From the sequence record NC_025447.1: a DNA stretch of 64,000 nucleotides, one strand, 5' to 3'. Shown piece by piece: positions 4,890-25,122 of the stretch (its first letter is position 1; the number at the start of each line of letters is the position of its first letter). The position numbers and the translations under genes are program-made. Under the pieces are notes generated by a model. It searched no databases. It was given only the letters and a program-made list of their open reading frames with translations, and was not told the origin of the DNA.

Positions 4890-6032
4890 TTATTTCCACG
4901 GTAGAAGGGAATCGGGGACTCTGGTTGGAACTCTCACGGCTGGAACATTTCCAAGTTCAGCCAAACCACTCATATACAAATTGTTATTTTCATCAATTAT
5001 CATTGAATAGAAATTATCAATTACGAAGCCTGAAATTCGTCTTCCTTCTAATGCATCAAGAACCATTTCGGTGAAAGTTAATATATTTTCGGATGTTTGA
5101 TTAACACCACATGCACCATAGGTATTTCGACCACAAGTATATAACTTATTATTATTTTTAACAACACATCCATTCCCTTCGTTGTTGGATAAACCACCCA
5201 CCAACTCTATTTCACCTTGGAATGATAAATTGGGAATTAATGTACTCATTGGTACTGCTGATACTCTACCTACACCAGCTTGACCATATGCATTTGGTGA
5301 AGCAACCTTCACTGAACCATCATTAAGAAATATATATGAAGTACGGTATGTATTTACAGCTTGTATAGCATTGGTGATCGTATTGTCTTTTGTAAAACTT
5401 AATATATTTGATGTTGTTGTACTACCAGGAGCAACAGTATTTCCTGCATACCAATAGGAACCATCATCAAGAACTAACCCAGTACTGAGCAAAGAACAGC
5501 CATAACTTTTAACATTTTCTATAGTGCTGTATCTGAACGATGTGACATTAGCTGTTGACGCGTTACCAAATACACCACCCTCGCCAGCACCACAGTAGAA
5601 CCATTTTCCATTTTTCAAAAATACACGCAAATTCTGTCCAACAGCAATACCATCAATATCATCAGCACTGACACCAAAATCAGTGAAGTACTGGGTTACA
5701 TCAATCCAAACCCCATTTGTATTTGTTCCGATTTGTGGCATTACTATACTAGCACCTGTGAACCAAATAGTTCCATCATTCTTAATGGCAATGGAACCAA
5801 GAACACCACCCCAGTAACGTTCAATATTATTATTCACACGGGTCCATACGGTGGATGATTGTAATGAACCATTACCACCTTGTCCAAATGAAGATGAACC
5901 ATACCAGTACAAGTCACCATTAACATGCAAATAAAAACGAGTATTATAATTTGCTTGTAATCTATTTTTAAATAGAGGTTTTGGTTCTGGTGCTTCATTT
6001 CCGTACTTAACCATTCTTGCAAAAGGTAACAT
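4890..6032 (-). CDS. RCC1/BLIP-II-like repeat protein, MLPF-leader family
   Basis: Motifs YGSSSFGQGGN, ASPNAYGQAGVG, CGRNTYGACGV; ends PTRVPDSLLPWK like 2496-3635. Confidence 0.8.
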   Translation of the reverse strand: MLPFARMVKYGNEAPEPKPLFKNRLQANYNTRFYLHVNGDLYWYGSSSFGQGGNGSLQSSTVWTRVNNNIERYWGGVLGSIAIKNDGTIWFTGASIVMPQIGTNTNGVWIDVTQYFTDFGVSADDIDGIAVGQNLRVFLKNGKWFYCGAGEGGVFGNASTANVTSFRYSTIENVKSYGCSLLSTGLVLDDGSYWYAGNTVAPGSTTTSNILSFTKDNTITNAIQAVNTYRTSYIFLNDGSVKVASPNAYGQAGVGRVSAVPMSTLIPNLSFQGEIELVGGLSNNEGNGCVVKNNNKLYTCGRNTYGACGVNQTSENILTFTEMVLDALEGRRISGFVIDNFYSMIIDENNNLYMSGLAELGNVPAVRVPTRVPDSLLPWK

Positions 6033-6106
6033 AATTCCCTCCTTTATTCATTATACTATATTTAATACAAAAAAGAAAAGCCAGTATCAAGTACTGGCAT
6101 ATCAAA

Positions 6107-7255
6107 TCACTGCAAAAATGACATATCGACTTCGGTATAATTAAGAACGTTCTGTCCAGCAATACCTCCCATTACTACAATTGAAGCCCCACAATAATAT
6201 AACTTCGAAGTGTCAGTAAGTATAAGTGAACCAGATGGGGTGCGTACCAAATTACACGAAGTATTAAACGAAGTATATGAAGGGGTATAAGAGTACTGAT
6301 TAATATTATTACCAACACCTAATTGACCAGACGAGTTGCTTCCAGATGCATAAAGTACTTCATCACCTTTAACTATATGTGACGCCATGTTACCAACACA
6401 AGTATATAAACTATAAACTCCTGAACTCAATAATGTTGGAGTTTTGTATTGTATATCTGTAGATGAAGAAGTACCACCTGTGCCAAATTCGTTCCCGTAT
6501 TGTGCACCGAACTGTTTACCACAAGCGTACAAATTATTATCCGATTTAATAAAAAATGTACTCTGATAACTGACATTACAATCTATAACATCCGAAGAAA
6601 TCATCGTCACCCCAGTAATAGAAGTTTGATTGCCTGTACCTAACTGATAGTAATAGTTAAAACCACAACCCCATAAAGTATTATCTTCTTTTAGGTATAT
6701 GTTACCAACTGCCTTTTTAACCGAAGTTATAGTATCTACCCTTTTGAATGTGTTAAAAGAATTAATGTTTGTACCATCACCAAATGATGATAGGTTAGAG
6801 TTATTGTTAGCTCCACAACAATACAATGTACCATCGTTTGTTATCAAATTTACCTTCATATCATTAAAACTACTCATGTATTTTATATCAGAAACATTAA
6901 TACCACCTGATGTTATCCATGTAGTACAGTCCGTCCACAAAGTTTTTCTATCAGTTACACCAGTGAATGCCTTCGTGTTGCCAGTGATAAAAACTTTTCC
7001 CGTACCTTTCTCTTCGTACAATTGACAATCACTACTGTTATCTTCCAATAGAACTCGTTTAACATTCTCCGCACAAAGAATAAATTTACTCGATGCTACA
7101 CCTGTTCCAGTACCCCAATTCGTCGCAGAAGATGCATACAACTTATCAGTATAAGTATCATGAAGATACATGGAATCACTGGAATATATTTTAAAACGTC
7201 CATCATCACCAGGGGCAATATTCCCGTACTTAACCATTCTTGCAAAAGGTAACAT
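6107..7255 (-). CDS. RCC1/BLIP-II-like repeat protein, MLPF-leader family
   Basis: Start corrected; motifs CGFNYYYQLGTG, SGSNSSGQLGVG. Confidence 0.8.
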   Translation of the reverse strand: MLPFARMVKYGNIAPGDDGRFKIYSSDSMYLHDTYTDKLYASSATNWGTGTGVASSKFILCAENVKRVLLEDNSSDCQLYEEKGTGKVFITGNTKAFTGVTDRKTLWTDCTTWITSGGINVSDIKYMSSFNDMKVNLITNDGTLYCCGANNNSNLSSFGDGTNINSFNTFKRVDTITSVKKAVGNIYLKEDNTLWGCGFNYYYQLGTGNQTSITGVTMISSDVIDCNVSYQSTFFIKSDNNLYACGKQFGAQYGNEFGTGGTSSSTDIQYKTPTLLSSGVYSLYTCVGNMASHIVKGDEVLYASGSNSSGQLGVGNNINQYSYTPSYTSFNTSCNLVRTPSGSLILTDTSKLYYCGASIVVMGGIAGQNVLNYTEVDMSFLQ

Positions 7256-7303
7256 AATTCCCTCCTTATTCATTATATCATATTTACCCAATAAAGAAAA
7301 CCC

Positions 7304-7332
7304 TTGACATCCTTTCAGTACTGTTGTACTAT
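7304..7332 (+). promoter_or_regulatory. sigma70-type promoter for family A array, divergent from the MLPF array
   Basis: TTGACA-17-TACTAT, AGTACT in spacer; AAGGAG RBS before ATG 7358. Confidence 0.8.
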
Positions 7333-7357
7333 AGAAGGAATATAAGGAGAACTACAC

Positions 7358-11194: not shown

Positions 11195-11821
11195 TTAAAC
11201 ACAAGTAGACAGGGGAAGCTCCTAGTGAACAACCTTTATGTACAGGCGAATTGTTAAAATTCAGCCTGGACAAATGCGATCACTAGGATTCTCCCCAGGC
11301 TAAACCCCGTAATCATAGGTAGTCATAAGTAATCATATATAAACATTTAAGTAATCATTTATAATCACTGTAGTGATCAGTAGTGATCAGTAGTGAGTAC
11401 TAGAGTACAGGAATGTTCACGTTTAATCAAGAACGTAGCAGTACTGATATGCCACTAAGTAGGCAGAGGAAGTCTGCCGTACTTTGTAGTTTCCAAGCTC
11501 CTTTTCCATTTTGCAAATTACATCAAATGTAATCAAAAGTAATCACGCAATGATTAGTACTGAATTATTACTTTCACCTTAATTTCAATTACCCCTTTAC
11601 CCTTCGGGGTAAAATTCAATTACCCCTTGAGGCTCCAGCAAAAAGTTGGTTAGTACTCCATCCTAAATCTCGATCCTAAAAATTTTGGAGTACCTATGAA
11701 ATAAAAGTTGGATCTTCGAAAGTTGAAATTTACGTTGGGACATATAGGATTTGTGGGATATAATGAGTTTTGTAGCGATACAGATTATACGATTTCAGTA
11801 CTGAATAATGAAAGAAAGCTA

Positions 11822-14728: not shown

Positions 14729-14810
14729 TACTTTTTTTTTACTATTCAGTACTGAAAACTATTTTTAAAAAGTACTTGCAAACTATGTTTAAAGGCGTAT
14801 AATGTTTTAC

Positions 14811-14885
14811 ATCAGGACGGGGAATGAAATAAGTAACTCCCTGTTAAGTAGTCCAGGAGTAAGACATACGAAAACCTCCCCTGAT
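14811..14885 (+). ncRNA. Candidate three-way-junction RNA between tandem promoters (copy 1)
   Basis: ATCAGG/CCTGAT, ACGGGGA/TCCCTGT and GGAG/CTCC stems; near-identical copy at 24783-24855. Confidence 0.5.
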
Positions 14886-14953
14886 AAAATAGTTTGACAA
14901 AGATTTATAAAAGCGTATAATACTTACATCAACTACTGAATGAGGGTTACAAA

Positions 14954-15565
14954 ATGAAAACTATCACTACTACTACTTTCGTTATGGCTTTTTCTGAACT
15001 GAACGCAGAACAACAAACGGCGGCTATCGAACTGGTTCGGGATCGGGAACGTGCAAGTGAGGATAATTTCTTTGCTGAGTCAGTACTGGAATACTATAAA
15101 GAAACAGTACTACCAGAATACGGCATAGATGAAGCTGAATTGCAATACAGTGGTTTTTGGTCGCAAGGTGACGGTGCATCAATCAGTACTGACCACGTTG
15201 ACGCTGAGAAGTTTTTACGCAAGGTTAAGGCGTTAACGAAATATCGTTCCATCCGTCACCTGTTGAACGAAGATGATTTGGAAATGAGTGTAGAACGTTC
15301 CCAATCGCGTTATGCACACGAAAACACGGTAGGCGGTTGCGTTGATACTCGCTACACTGATTTAACTGTAAAACAGGCGGCGTTAGCTGAGGAACTGGAA
15401 AATTTACTGACTGACACGATCCGAGAATTATCTTGTAAGCTGTACCGTGATTTAGAAAATGCTTATGAAGACCAGTTTACTACTGAAAACATTGTAGGAC
15501 TGATTGAGGGTAACGAATATCAATTTAATGTTATCGATGGTGTAGTAGAATCTATCGCATATTAA
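14954..15565 (+). CDS. Early hypothetical acidic protein (YSGFWSQGDGA motif)
   Basis: 203 aa ORF, GAGG RBS, own promoter. Confidence 0.8.
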   Translation: MKTITTTTFVMAFSELNAEQQTAAIELVRDRERASEDNFFAESVLEYYKETVLPEYGIDEAELQYSGFWSQGDGASISTDHVDAEKFLRKVKALTKYRSIRHLLNEDDLEMSVERSQSRYAHENTVGGCVDTRYTDLTVKQAALAEELENLLTDTIRELSCKLYRDLENAYEDQFTTENIVGLIEGNEYQFNVIDGVVESIAY

Positions 15566-17005: not shown

Positions 17006-17305
17006 ATGAAAACTGCAATCATCGCCCTGGCTTTATCTGTTTCCTCTTTCGCTGTTAACGCTTCCGTTGATGTACAGAAAGAAAAATTCATTCAGTGCAC
17101 TGTTGCAATGACTAACGAGGAAACGGCTGAGATCGTTACCAAATCCCTGGAACTGGCCCCTGCAATGTTTGCTAATGGCCCGTACCATGAAGAAGATGAT
17201 CAGGGTAGCACGACCATCTATTACGATGCAAAAAGTAAACGCGGTTCTGTCACTGTAATGGATACAGAGAAAGTTACATTCACTGGCGTAATTAATTGTT
17301 TATAA
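17006..17305 (+). CDS. Early protein with Sec signal peptide
   Basis: MKTAIIALALSVSSFAVNA cleavage-like N-terminus; AAGGA RBS. Confidence 0.75.
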   Translation: MKTAIIALALSVSSFAVNASVDVQKEKFIQCTVAMTNEETAEIVTKSLELAPAMFANGPYHEEDDQGSTTIYYDAKSKRGSVTVMDTEKVTFTGVINCL

Positions 17306-17322
17306 TATAGTACTGAATCACT

Positions 17323-17350
17323 AGCCCACTATAAGGAGTGGGCTTTTTTT
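17323..17350 (+). terminator. Intrinsic terminator
   Basis: AGCCCAC-loop-GTGGGCT-TTTTTT. Confidence 0.85.
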
Positions 17351-17543
17351 ATTGTAGGATTGTAGTACTGGTATACTTTGAAAATAGTTTTAAAAAAGTA
17401 GTTGACATTACCAGGGAAAAGCGTAGAATGTATTACATCAAGACGGGGAACATTAAGTAGACCGCCAGTAAGTCGAATGAAAAACTGGACACGTCAAACA
17501 AACTTTGATAAACTAACTTAAACTTTAATTGAGGATTTATAAA

Positions 17544-18026
17544 ATGGCTAATGTAAAATCATTTCTGAAAGCACTGATTTCTAACGATACTGTCATTGCT
17601 GCTGAATTGCTGGCTGACCTGGATAATGATACCATGAAAGCAGTACGCAACAATTTTAACATTGCTTACAGTGAAGCGAAAGAACTACAAGCCAAAAAGG
17701 TAGCAGAACTGGAAGAACAGAAAAAAGCCCGTGAAGCAGAACTGCAAGCAACAATAGAAAGTATTCAGGCGGCGGTGTCTGGTTTAGATCTGGAAGTGGT
17801 TATTGAAATGGCACATAAAGCCCTGGCGGTTAAGTACGGTGAAGATAAGCCGGAATCTAAGCCTAAAAAATGGATTCAAGAACGTGTTACGGTTGTCCTT
17901 GATAACGGGGAAGAACATTTGATTCCTGTACGCGGTAACTGCATTGCGGTAGTACTGGATGCTATCAAAGAAAGCGGTATGACTCGCGAGGAATGGATCG
18001 AATCTCACCGCAAAATTGAAGCATAA
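17544..18026 (+). CDS. H-NS/StpA-like protein with divergent DNA-binding motif
   Basis: Start corrected to MANVKS. Charged coiled-coil N-half; C-terminus VVLDNGEEHLIPVRGNCIAVVLDAIKESGMTREEWI aligns by eye with H-NS [36 protein letters not shown]. Confidence 0.6.
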   Translation: MANVKSFLKALISNDTVIAAELLADLDNDTMKAVRNNFNIAYSEAKELQAKKVAELEEQKKAREAELQATIESIQAAVSGLDLEVVIEMAHKALAVKYGEDKPESKPKKWIQERVTVVLDNGEEHLIPVRGNCIAVVLDAIKESGMTREEWIESHRKIEA

Positions 18027-18047
18027 CATTTAAAGTACTGAATCACT

Positions 18048-18073
18048 AGCCCACTTATACAGTGGGCTTTTTT
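18048..18073 (+). terminator. Intrinsic terminator
   Basis: AGCCCACT-TATAC-AGTGGGCT-TTTTT. Confidence 0.85.
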
Positions 18074-18300
18074 GTGTCTATAGTATTCCATGCCGTCAGC
18101 ACCTCATAGAATCGATTCTAACGCATTAAACTGATTATCTGATGCATCGCCCTAGCTGGTGGAGTTAAGGCCGTTAGAATGCGATTGAGAGCGTTTAAAG
18201 TATTTTGCAAAAAGTAATAAAAAGTACTTGCACGATTCAGAGATTAGCGTATAATGTTTTACATCAAGGCGAAACACCTTAACTAACTGAGGATATAAAG

Positions 18301-24700: not shown

Positions 24701-24782
24701 CTGGTGGCTAGTACTATCAAGTACTGAAAACTATTTTTAAAAAGTACTTGCATTGTACTTAGAATCAAGTATAATGTTTTAC

Positions 24783-24855
24783 ATCAGGACGGGGAACGAA
24801 ACAAGTAACCCCGTTAAGTAGTCCAGGAGTAAGACATACGAAAACCTCCCCTGAT
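24783..24855 (+). ncRNA. Candidate three-way-junction RNA (copy 2)
   Basis: Near-identical to 14811-14885; variable arm keeps ACGGGG/CCCCGT pairing. Confidence 0.5.
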
Positions 24856-24921
24856 AAAATAGTTTGACAATAGAAATTAAACAAGTATAATACTTACATC
24901 AACCACAAAGAGGAATACAAA

Positions 24922-25122
24922 ATGAAACATTTTACTTTCGGTGTAGTAGGCTTTACAGTATCCAGCGGCGTTTATAAATCAGAACGCGGTGCTAAAAATG
25001 CAGCAAGTCGGGCGTATGGTTCACAGCGTGACTTACAGGTCGGTTATATTAGTAACATTAATAACATGTTTATTCCTGTTTCACAGCGTAAAGCGGGTAA
25101 CATGAAATGGGAAACAATTTGA
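24922..25122 (+). CDS. Early hypothetical protein
   Basis: GAGGA RBS, own promoter. Confidence 0.75.
   Translation: MKHFTFGVVGFTVSSGVYKSERGAKNAASRAYGSQRDLQVGYISNINNMFIPVSQRKAGNMKWETI

What the first reader, a model, noticed from the sequence alone, without database searches (positions are those of the whole stretch)
17402..18073. Phage H-NS-like protein with an altered DNA-binding motif in its own promoter-terminator unit
Seen: coiled-coil N-half; C-domain matches H-NS spacing by eye, but TWTGQGRTP is replaced by LIPVRGNCI; structured 5' leader. Established: the H-NS (Q/R)GR AT-hook-like motif drives AT-rich DNA binding, and T7 gp5.5 and truncated H-NS variants antagonise silencing. Inference: a dominant-negative mimic protecting this AT-rich genome from xenogeneic silencing, or a re-specified phage nucleoid protein, possibly the reader of the AGTACT motif.
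Basis: partly seen in the sequence, partly recalled or inferred. Interest (0 to 1): 0.65.

Follow-up and report, generated by a model that had tools for sequence, protein, structure and literature searches.

The report
Divergent H-NS-like protein of jumbo phage
An early gene in the terminal-repeat region of the giant, AT-rich E. coli phage 121Q encodes a very diverged relative of the bacterial DNA-silencing protein H-NS whose DNA-contact loop carries Gly-Asn (as in Pseudomonas MvaT) instead of Gly-Arg, so this lytic phage probably brings its own nucleoid protein to deal with host silencing.

Summary
The window is Escherichia phage 121Q (Asteriusvirus). The finding is gp277, annotated as a hypothetical protein: CDS 17544-18026 (+), 160 aa.

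**Confirmed**
- A near-consensus sigma-70 promoter, a terminator, and a long N-terminal helix.
- A C-terminal domain that aligns without gaps to the H-NS DNA-binding domain, with TWTGQGRTP replaced by LIPVRGNCI.

**Not confirmed**
- The structured leader: fold z-scores are -0.14 and -0.9.
- The leader is nevertheless a conserved, diverged copy of a repeated promoter-proximal element.

**Relation to H-NS**
- Pfam and NCBIfam H-NS models do not match.
- Profile-profile comparison with an H-NS profile gives 94.7% probability, E 6e-8. The score is 52 against at most 18.5 in 200 shuffles.
- Central dimerisation site 2 and the DNA-binding domain each score independently.
- A model of the C-terminal domain ranks the H-NS domain first in Foldseek and the MvaT domain first in VIA-align, but absolute scores are weak.

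**The loop**
- Gly131-Asn132 is invariant in all 20 family members. It sits where H-NS has Gly113-Arg114 and where MvaT has its minor-groove Asn100.
- The C-terminal part is the most constrained (dN/dS 0.07). The altered motif is therefore probably a different working DNA-reading loop, not a dead one.

**Context and mechanism**
- In relatives the gene lies about 6 kb from the left end, inside the 20-21 kb direct terminal repeat.
- The mechanism (anti-silencing, silencing or heteromerisation with H-NS) is untested.

This scan reached the same reading before on another jumbo phage (s1-160387).

The parts
17402..17429 (+). Sigma-70-type promoter, TTGACA - 16 nt - TAGAAT, preceded by an A-rich stretch (AAAAAAGTAG)
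   Evidence: 11 of 12 consensus positions. Identical in phage vB_Ec-M-J.
17430..17543 (+). Long 5' leader (about 108 nt from a start near 17436). It is a diverged copy of a promoter-proximal element also present at 14806-14900 and 24778-24870, here without the second promoter. Shine-Dalgarno GAGGA at 17531-17535, 8 nt before the ATG.
   Evidence: Alignment of the three leaders. The first ~20 nt recur at other early promoters. Promoter plus leader 93% identical to vB_Ec-M-J. Folds not better than shuffles. No Rfam family.
17544..18026 (+). CDS of gp277, 160 aa plus TAA stop (P0001): a divergent H-NS-family protein
   Evidence: dN/dS 0.128 against vB_Ec-M-J. Family of about 18 true relatives among 1.84 billion representative proteins.
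17544..17726 (+). N-terminal helical part (aa 1-61): two short helices and the first half of a 50-residue helix. No detectable sequence similarity to H-NS dimerisation site 1.
   Evidence: Model. hhalign of the N-terminal halves gives probability 6.9%. No PF22470 match.
17727..17840 (+). aa 62-99: end of the long helix, the G80-L-D turn and helix 4. Aligns with H-NS central dimerisation site 2 (G69-I-D).
   Evidence: hhalign of this segment alone: probability 61%, E 8e-5, score 22.2 against at most 14.3 in 60 shuffles. Alignment.
17841..17882 (+). Lys/Pro-rich linker (aa 100-113). Over aa 97-113, the span for which charge was computed, the net charge is +1, less basic than the H-NS linker (+3 to +7).
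   Evidence: pLDDT dips to 61 here.
17883..18008 (+). C-terminal H-NS-fold domain (aa 114-155): beta-hairpin, loop, two helices
   Evidence: Models. Foldseek rank 1 is 2L93, the H-NS C-terminal domain. VIA-align rank 1 is 2MXF, the MvaT C-terminal domain. hhalign of this domain alone: probability 65%, E 6e-5, score 23.4 against at most 14.1 in shuffles. dN/dS 0.067.
17928..17945 (+). Loop V129-R-G-N-C-I134, opposite H-NS G111-Q-G-R-T-P116. G131 and N132 are invariant in 20 of 20 family members.
   Evidence: MvaT N100 superposes on H-NS R114 (PMC4466236).
18048..18074 (+). Intrinsic terminator: an 8-bp stem with 5 G-C pairs, then a T run
   Evidence: A near-identical hairpin closes the upstream gene at 17323-17344.

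Best explanation
gp277 is a full-length but very diverged member of the H-NS family of nucleoid-associated proteins, encoded by a lytic jumbo phage.

**Shown**
- It has the H-NS order of parts: two short helices, one long helix, a Gly-Leu-Asp turn and fourth helix like H-NS dimerisation site 2, a Lys/Pro linker, and a beta-hairpin/loop/helix domain like the H-NS DNA-binding domain.
- In the loop that H-NS inserts into the minor groove, the family has an invariant Gly-Asn instead of Gly-Arg.

**Inferred**
- The protein is made at once by host RNA polymerase from its own strong promoter, on the first DNA to enter the cell. In relatives the gene lies in the direct terminal repeat, about 6 kb from the left end.
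- It self-associates through its helical half and binds AT-rich DNA through the Gly-Asn loop, the way MvaT uses Asn100.
- Its most likely role is to occupy the 65% A+T phage genome in competition with host H-NS/StpA. That would make it a Ler-like anti-silencer or phage chromatin protein, rather than a poison of H-NS made by removing a DNA-binding domain.
For: **Homology**
- hhalign of the 20-sequence phage family against a 16-sequence H-NS profile (chromosomal plus plasmid paralogues): probability 94.7%, E 6.3e-8, 85 columns, phage 70-160 against H-NS 57-137.
- 200 column shuffles reach at most a score of 18.5, against 52.4 for the real pair.
- The site-2 segment and the C-terminal domain each score on their own: 22.2 and 23.4, against at most 14.3 in shuffles.
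- An independent GenBank note for the Muenster homologue (37% identical): HHpred hit to NP_417155.1, which is StpA, at 97.2%.

**Fold**
- A C-terminal-domain model (pLDDT 78.5) ranks 2L93 (H-NS C-terminal domain) first of 350,542 chains in Foldseek. 1HNR and 2LEV (Ler) are also listed.
- VIA-align ranks 2MXF (MvaT C-terminal domain with DNA) first of 48,161 chains: Z 3.7, rmsd 2.7 over 44 of 47 residues, one Z unit above the next chain.
- Language-model neighbours are H-NS clusters, but this is a lead only (score 0.76).

**A working loop**
- G131-N132 are the only invariant residues apart from Met1 in an alignment with 31% mean column identity.
- dN/dS is 0.067 for residues 100-160 and 0.178 for 1-99.
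- In MvaT, N100 occupies the place of H-NS R114. N100A weakens DNA binding more than 3-fold and abolishes repression (PMC4466236).
- Most family members keep a Lys six residues after the Asn, as H-NS does (K120).

**Timing and context**
- Consensus promoter and terminator.
- The gene lies inside the annotated direct terminal repeats of vB_Ec-M-J (6853-7335 of 1-21525) and Muenster (5709-6209 of 1-20030).
- It is gene 001 of Serratia phage BF and gene 006 of Salmonella phage Munch.
- The window has 34.8% G+C.
Against: - No H-NS model of Pfam or NCBIfam matches, and an HMM of the family finds no H-NS chain in the PDB.
- Structural scores are weak in absolute terms: Foldseek E 1.2, TM 0.45-0.49, and Z 3.7 and 2.0. 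These are ordinary for a 50-residue domain, but not proof.
- The N-terminal 60 residues show no sequence relation to H-NS.
- The 121Q linker is only weakly basic (+1 against +3 to +7 in H-NS). The core C-terminal domain of the Asteriusvirus proteins has net charge -3 and has lost the Lys after the loop, so DNA affinity may be low.
- Self-association, DNA binding, early expression and any effect on H-NS are all untested.
- RNA-library contigs of relatives over the gene do not prove transcription.
Confidence: 0.5

Rival explanations
1. H-NS antagonist by hetero-oligomerisation. The site-2-like turn and helix (residues about 62-99) dock onto the central dimerisation site of host H-NS/StpA. Because the phage protein's site 1 is foreign, H-NS filaments are capped or broken. 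The effect would resemble T7 gp5.5 or H-NST.
For: - The segment aligned with H-NS site 2 scores on its own, and the G-[LI]-D turn is shared.
- Truncated H-NS forms and T7 protein 5.5 act through the oligomerisation region (reviews PMC7074111 and PMC6606824).
- The phage genome is 65% A+T, hence a natural H-NS target.
Against: - All known dominant-negative forms lack the DNA-binding domain. Here that domain is present and is the most conserved part.
- There is no sequence similarity to site 1.
- The similarity at site 2 is only 16-24% identity.
- No interaction test could be run. Complex prediction was unreachable in 13 attempts.
Confidence: 0.2
2. A phage-made silencer or organiser rather than an anti-silencer. 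It would coat AT-rich DNA to repress transcription. Possible targets are host horizontally acquired loci such as defence islands, as proposed for the EPV1 phage H-NS, or the phage's own early or terminal-repeat genes as a timing device.
For: - The architecture is that of a complete silencer: oligomerisation half, linker and DNA-binding domain.
- Phage and prophage homologues of silencers (EPV1 H-NS, CgpS/Lsr2) are thought to repress (PMC7074111).
- The promoter and leader of its own gene are unusually conserved, which would suit autoregulation.
Against: - Nothing here separates repression from anti-repression.
- The weakly basic linker argues against strong filament formation on DNA.
- An early protein that silences AT-rich DNA would also silence the phage itself, unless it is specifically targeted.
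Confidence: 0.2
3. Not a DNA-binding H-NS relative at all. It would be a helical early protein whose small C-terminal beta-hairpin/helix domain resembles H-NS by convergence and binds something else, such as RNA or a host protein.
For: - Curated HMMs do not match.
- Structural scores are below the usual significance levels.
- The C-terminal domain of the 121Q protein is acidic.
- There are weak PHROG matches to scaffold-like families (phrog_206, E 7e-4).
Against: - Two collinear segments each score far above shuffles against H-NS.
- An independent HHpred run by others reached StpA.
- Two different structure aligners both put H-NS-family domains first among 48,000 to 350,000 chains.
- The invariant residues fall exactly in the DNA-inserting loop.
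Confidence: 0.1

Closest known systems
H-NS / StpA of Enterobacteria (Pfam PF22470 + PF00816)
   Same: - Same order of elements: two short helices, a long helix, a Gly-x-Asp turn plus helix (site 2), a flexible Lys-rich linker, then beta-hairpin, loop, helix, helix.
- The C-terminal alignment is gapless. It keeps K96/R114, the hairpin Gly (G104/G122), the loop Gly (G113/G131), G127/G145 and F133-L134/W151-I152.
   Different: - The signature TWTG(Q/R)GRxP is not kept: W to I, G111 to V, R114 to N.
- The linker is much less basic.
- The N-terminal site 1 is unrelated in sequence.
- Curated HMMs do not match.
- It is encoded by a lytic phage in its terminal repeat.
MvaT / MvaU of Pseudomonas (AT-pincer, PDB 2MXF)
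   Same: - Gly-Asn in the minor-groove loop. MvaT N100 takes the place of H-NS R114 (PMC4466236).
- The MvaT C-terminal domain is the best structural match in the search that does not depend on Foldseek (Z 3.7).
   Different: [quoted passage not shown] The phage loop has H-NS length.
- No clear counterpart of the second pincer arm R80. The conserved R114 aligns with H-NS K96.
- The lysine network of MvaT is only partly present.
Ler of the LEE island (PDB 2LEV)
   Same: - An H-NS-family DNA-binding domain joined to a diverged helical N-terminal part.
- Acts as an anti-silencer by competing with H-NS on AT-rich DNA. This is the mode of action proposed here.
- The Ler domain appears in all three structure searches.
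   Different: - Ler keeps an Arg-Gly-Arg loop.
- It is a chromosomal island regulator.
- No functional data exist for gp277.
T7 gp5.5, H-NST and truncated H-NS (dominant-negative antagonists)
   Same: They are made by phages or islands to relieve H-NS silencing, and they work through the oligomerisation region.
   Different: They have no DNA-binding domain. gp277 has one, and it is the most constrained part of the protein.
Phage-encoded silencer homologues (EPV1 H-NS; Lsr2/CgpS of actinophages and prophages)
   Same: Xenogeneic-silencer homologues carried by phages (PMC7074111).
   Different: - Those are recognisable by ordinary sequence models and are mostly in temperate phages.
- A tblastn with E. 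coli H-NS finds no phage in 50,697 records.
- The present family is confined to Rak2-like jumbo phages and a few metagenomic contigs.

Membership tests
H-NS family (Pfam Histone_HNS PF00816, Histone_HNS_N PF22470) | Match to the curated C-terminal model PF00816 at or above the gathering score | tested here: not met
   No PF00816 match for P0001 even at E up to 10. No match anywhere in the 121Q genome in six frames. E. coli hns and stpA score 59.6 and 63.6 bits as positive controls.
H-NS family (Pfam Histone_HNS PF00816, Histone_HNS_N PF22470) | N-terminal dimerisation site 1 (PF22470; the LNNIRTLRA-type helices) | tested here: not met
   No PF22470 match. hhalign of the N-terminal halves gives probability 6.9%. 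Only the number and order of predicted helices agree.
H-NS family (Pfam Histone_HNS PF00816, Histone_HNS_N PF22470) | Remote homology by profile-profile comparison over site 2, the linker and the DNA-binding domain | tested here: met
   Probability 94.7%, E 6.3e-8 over 85 columns. Shuffle maximum 18.5 against 52.4. Both segments score separately. HHpred to StpA at 97.2% for the Muenster homologue, by its annotators.
H-NS family (Pfam Histone_HNS PF00816, Histone_HNS_N PF22470) | C-terminal fold: two-stranded hairpin, loop, alpha helix, short helix | tested here: met
   Predicted elements E114-118, E124-128, H135-144 and H148-155. The best chains are the H-NS domain 2L93 (Foldseek rank 1, TM 0.45/0.49, E 1.2) and the MvaT domain 2MXF (VIA Z 3.7). 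Ler 2LEV scores Z 2.0. The ranks are consistent, but the absolute scores are weak.
H-NS family (Pfam Histone_HNS PF00816, Histone_HNS_N PF22470) | Signature T-W-T-G-(Q/R)-G-R-x-P with Arg114 in the minor groove | tested here: not met
   The phage has L-I-P-V-R-G-N-C-I. Only G113 is kept, and Arg114 is Asn in 20 of 20 family members.
H-NS family (Pfam Histone_HNS PF00816, Histone_HNS_N PF22470) | Strongly basic linker before the DNA-binding domain | tested here: not met
   Net charge +1 in 121Q and 0 to +4 across the family, against +3 to +7 in 16 H-NS proteins.
H-NS family (Pfam Histone_HNS PF00816, Histone_HNS_N PF22470) | Self-oligomerisation and binding to or bridging of AT-rich DNA | not testable with these tools
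   This needs biochemistry. The complex predictor could not be reached.
MvaT-type silencers (AT-pincer) | Gly-Asn in loop 2, with Asn reading the minor groove | tested here: met
   At the sequence level, G131-N132 are invariant and align with H-NS G113-R114. The MvaT structure paper equates these with MvaT G99-N100. The function of the Asn is not tested.
MvaT-type silencers (AT-pincer) | Loop 2 shortened by two residues (KGGNH), and Arg80 as the second arm of the pincer | tested here: not met
   The phage loop has the H-NS length. The conserved Arg114 aligns with H-NS K96 at the start of strand 1, not with the position described for R80. No MvaT sequence was at hand for a direct profile comparison.
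Dominant-negative H-NS antagonists (H-NST, truncated H-NS, T7 gp5.5) | Oligomerisation-region binder that lacks a DNA-binding domain | tested here: not met
   The C-terminal domain is present in all family members and is under the strongest purifying selection.

The most novel reading that the evidence does not exclude
Rak2-like jumbo phages carry a third solution for reading AT-rich DNA within the H-NS fold: an H-NS-length loop with MvaT's Asn. The protein is delivered as an immediate-early product from the terminal repeat. It would build phage-specific chromatin on the incoming 65% A+T genome. It would exclude, or co-polymerise through site 2 with and cap, host H-NS/StpA. It might also recognise a phage-enriched word such as AGTACT.
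Probability: 0.2. Interest if true: 0.75.

Novelty: new variant of a known kind. Interest (0 to 1): 0.55.

Why it matters
H-NS silences AT-rich foreign DNA. How large lytic phages with 65% A+T genomes, and no known nucleus-like shelter, escape it is little studied. The known phage answers (T7 gp5.5, T4 Arn and MotB, LUZ24 Mip) are small inhibitors, not H-NS relatives.

A conserved, immediate-early, full-length H-NS-family protein with a Gly-Asn loop would be a different strategy: the phage brings its own nucleoid protein. It would also give a natural experiment on how the H-NS fold reads the minor groove, since it combines the loop length of H-NS with the Asn of MvaT.

The claim can be tested directly with DNA-binding assays, reporter assays and phage deletions in laboratory E. 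coli.

In all Asteriusvirus records inspected here the gene is annotated as a hypothetical protein. None of the genome papers searched mentions H-NS.

Tried and rejected
- **Curated family scans.** Pfam, PHROGs and NCBIfam gave no informative family. The PHROG 'head scaffolding' match (phrog_206, E 7e-4) was set aside: it is a helical-bias match, and a scaffold role does not fit a position among early genes with sigma-70 promoters.
- **HMM against PDB sequences.** No H-NS chain appeared. The top hit, ApeA (E 0.012), was judged to be chance.
- **Structure searches with the whole model.** These returned only generic long-helix matches, so the C-terminal domain was modelled alone.
- **The search for related loci.** The scan of viral contigs found nothing.
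- **tblastn of H-NS against phages.** No phage was found.
- **Long repetitive proteins from the profile search.** P0035, P0043 and P0044 are repeat or low-complexity proteins, not relatives.
- **RNA structure in the leader.** Not better than shuffles. The Rfam Trp_leader matches below threshold are just the terminator hairpins.
- **Expression.** Only short contigs of 90-95% relatives turned up in wastewater metatranscriptome libraries. They show presence in RNA libraries, not transcription.
- **Complex prediction.** Complex prediction (H-NS 1-83 with gp277 1-100) was attempted 13 times and never answered. There is no result for or against heteromerisation.
- **MvaT profile.** No MvaT sequence could be obtained from a tool, so no direct profile comparison with the MvaT family was made.
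Full report
**Identity of the window and the gene**

The region is 100% identical to Escherichia phage 121Q (KM507819, genus Asteriusvirus, 348.5 kb). The window is genome 124001-188000. The finding is gp277, annotated 'hypothetical protein'. The ORF runs from the ATG at 17544 to the TAA at 18024-18026 and gives 160 aa. A GAGGA lies 8 nt upstream of the ATG.

**The observation**

- The scan finds TTGACA-16-TAGAAT at 17402-17429 (11 of 12) and a terminator hairpin at 18048-18068 with a T run.
- The preceding gene ends in a near-identical terminator at 17323-17344. The gene therefore stands in its own promoter-terminator unit.
- The AlphaFold2 model built on a 20-sequence family alignment has mean pLDDT 83. 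It shows helices 7-12, 16-23, 28-77 and 83-97, a low-confidence linker, strands 114-118 and 124-128, a loop, and helices 135-144 and 148-155.
- BLASTP against E. coli H-NS (taken from NC_000913) aligns 88-152 with H-NS 74-134 at 27% identity, E 0.001 for the pair.
- The 'structured leader' is not supported. The z-scores are -0.14 and -0.91, and no Rfam family matches.

**Relatives**

- Close homologues (82-97% identity) are in all Asteriusvirus coliphages and related Salmonella phages.
- Homologues at 31-38% identity are in Klebsiella (RaK2, K64-1, Muenster), Salmonella (Munch, 7t3, SE_PL), Erwinia and Serratia jumbo phages. A Yersinia jumbo phage also carries one.
- A profile search of 1.84 billion representative proteins gave only 22 hits. 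Three of these are unrelated repeat proteins.
- The distant members sit on short metagenomic contigs full of small same-strand ORFs, which look like phage early regions. One contig carries two paralogues.
- None has a Pfam domain.
- In the family alignment (31% mean column identity) the only invariant residues besides Met1 are G131 and N132. R114, G122, G145, R148, I152, K97, G80 and L23 are nearly invariant.

**Is it H-NS-like?**

- Curated models say no. PF00816 and PF22470 do not match the protein or any frame of the genome. NCBIfam gives nothing, and the family HMM finds no H-NS chain in the PDB.
- Profile-profile comparison says yes. Against 14 close H-NS/StpA sequences the probability is 88%.
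- Against a more diverse profile that adds nine plasmid paralogues, the probability is 94.7%, E 6.3e-8, over 85 columns: phage 70-160 against H-NS 57-137.
- In 200 column-shuffled controls the best score was 18.5, against 52.4 for the real pair. The reversed profile gave 22.9.
- Split in two, the segment matching H-NS dimerisation site 2 (with G80-L-D opposite G69-I-D) and the C-terminal domain each score above all shuffles. The scores are 22.2 and 23.4, against at most 14.3 and 14.1.
- The N-terminal 80 residues alone give nothing (probability 6.9%).
- Independently, the annotators of Klebsiella phage Muenster noted for its homologue 'HHpred hit to NP_417155.1 97.2% probability'. I confirmed that NP_417155.1 is StpA. 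RefSeq calls the K64-1 homologue 'DNA-binding protein'.

**Fold**

- Searches with the whole model were swamped by the long helix.
- A model of residues 104-160 alone, built on nine diverse family members taken by reference from fetched contigs, has pLDDT 78.5.
- In Foldseek against 350,542 PDB chains the first hit is 2L93, the C-terminal domain of Salmonella H-NS (TM 0.45/0.49, 26% identity, E 1.2). 1HNR is at rank 10 and the Ler domain 2LEV at rank 48.
- VIA-align against 48,161 representatives, which does not depend on Foldseek, puts 2MXF first. This is the MvaT C-terminal domain bound to DNA: Z 3.7, rmsd 2.7 over 44 of its 47 residues. Only 13 chains reach Z 2, and Ler is among them.
- Re-alignment of Foldseek's list leaves only Ler above Z 2.
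- These scores are not significant one by one, as expected for about 50 residues. But three members of one family come out on top of two independent searches.
- A language-model look-up also lists H-NS clusters. At a score of 0.76 this is a lead only.

**The loop**

- In H-NS the Q112-G113-R114 loop enters the minor groove.
- The MvaT structure paper (PMC4466236) states that MvaT's loop 2 is KGGNH and that the N100 side chain is placed like R114 of H-NS.
- It also reports that R80 and N100 form the 'AT-pincer'. N100A weakens binding more than 3-fold, and N100A fails to repress in vivo.
- In the phage family the residue opposite R114 is Asn in all 20 sequences, preceded by an invariant Gly. The residue opposite Q112 varies (R, N, S, T, K, H).
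- The loop has the H-NS length, not MvaT's shortened one.
- The C-terminal 61 codons have dN/dS 0.067 against 0.178 for the first 99, measured against vB_Ec-M-J (whole gene 0.128, dS 0.78).
- The altered motif is therefore the best-conserved feature of the family. It matches a known working solution, which argues against a decayed DNA-binding domain.
- Caveats: the linker is only weakly basic (+1, against +3 to +7 in H-NS). The Asteriusvirus proteins have also lost the Lys that most family members and H-NS carry six residues after the loop.

**Genomic setting**

- In vB_Ec-M-J the orthologue lies at 6853-7335, inside the annotated 21,525-bp direct terminal repeat.
- In Muenster it lies at 5709-6209 of a 20,030-bp repeat.
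- Many Asteriusvirus records that include both repeats hold the gene twice.
- Terminal repeats of about 21 kb were confirmed by restriction digests for fEgEco12 (PMC13070987). PhageTerm gave the same for Sharanji (PMC11895373).
- In Serratia phage BF it is gene 001 and in Salmonella phage Munch gene 006.
- By synteny, the physical left end of 121Q should lie near window position 11,400. That makes gp277 about the twelfth gene from the end. All of these genes are on one strand and have host-type promoters.
- The window has 34.8% G+C.
- I infer immediate-early expression by host RNA polymerase. This is not shown. Wastewater metatranscriptome libraries hold short contigs of relatives over the gene, which is no proof of transcription.

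**The leader**

- Promoter plus leader are 93% identical between 121Q and vB_Ec-M-J, although synonymous sites of the CDS are near saturation.
- The leader aligns with elements upstream of gp271 (about 14806-14900) and of the gene at 24922 (about 24778-24870).
- In those two copies a first promoter, an element of about 90 nt and a second promoter precede the gene. In the gp277 copy the second promoter has decayed.
- This explains the long leader. None of the three folds better than shuffles in a convincing way (z -0.91, -0.74, -1.83).

**Mechanism**

- The shown parts are the architecture, the homology signal, the invariant Gly-Asn, the selection pattern and the position of the gene.
- The inferred parts are self-association, AT-rich DNA binding through the Gly-Asn loop, early synthesis and the biological role.
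- I favour a Ler-like role, meaning competition with H-NS/StpA on the incoming AT-rich phage DNA. The protein keeps a constrained DNA-binding domain but has a foreign site 1.
- Heteromerisation with H-NS through the site-2-like segment remains possible. So does a silencing role.
- The only in-silico test available, complex prediction with H-NS 1-83 and gp277 1-100, could not be run, so there is no result either way.
- Nothing ties the protein to AGTACT. That word occurs 264 times in the window against 19.8 expected and belongs to the repeated promoter and terminator units as well as to coding DNA.

**Novelty**

- Silencer homologues on plasmids, islands, prophages and one metagenomic phage (EPV1), and Lsr2 in actinophages, are known (PMC7074111).
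- A tblastn with H-NS finds no phage in 50,697 records.
- The jumbo-phage papers I searched do not mention H-NS.
- The StpA likeness exists only as a GenBank note for Muenster.
- This scan had already reached the same reading on another Rak2-like phage (s1-160387, seen after my own analysis).
- I rate it a new variant of a known kind.

Noticed in passing
window 14806-14900, 17430-17543, 24778-24870: Three related promoter-proximal elements. In two of them the order is first promoter, an element of about 90 nt (AUCAGGACGGGGAA...CCUCCCCUGAU), second promoter, RBS. The copy before gp277 has lost the second promoter and serves as a long leader. Its promoter plus leader are 93% identical to vB_Ec-M-J, while the CDS is 82% identical.
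   Followed up: partly
window about 11,400 to about 32,500: By synteny with vB_Ec-M-J (gene 001 corresponds to 121Q gp266) and Muenster, the physical left end of the 121Q genome should lie near window 11,400. The next ~21 kb would then correspond to the direct terminal repeat of relatives. The 121Q record holds it once.
   Followed up: partly
whole window; e.g. 16923, 17309, 17364, 18034, 18223: AGTACT occurs 264 times against 19.8 expected (no shuffle above 35). Copies sit at the upstream edge of the -35 hexamer of early promoters, and between the stop codon and the terminator hairpin, as well as inside genes.
   Followed up: partly
L009:698-1291 and L009:2047-2640: One metagenomic contig carries two 197-aa paralogues of the family about 750 bp apart. 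They are followed by a DksA/TraR-type zinc-finger gene, as in Salmonella phage Munch.
   Followed up: no
window 14954-15565 (gp271): This 203-aa early gene in the terminal-repeat region has the same length as (612 nt), and a comparable position to, the gene that the Muenster and K64-1 annotators call a 'YeeU-like antitoxin'. A DksA-like zinc-finger gene (gp294) and an acetyltransferase (gp295) lie about 5 kb downstream of gp277.
   Followed up: no
L021:206-667 (IncX4 plasmid): A plasmid H-NS paralogue next to hha has the loop S-G-N-G-K-R-P instead of T-G-Q-G-R-T-P. This shows that the first and third loop positions vary within bona fide H-NS proteins.
   Followed up: no
window 17278-17351 and 18011-18075: The sub-threshold Rfam Trp_leader matches (19 and 27 bits, gathering score 41) coincide with the two near-identical terminator hairpins. 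They are not leaders.
   Followed up: yes
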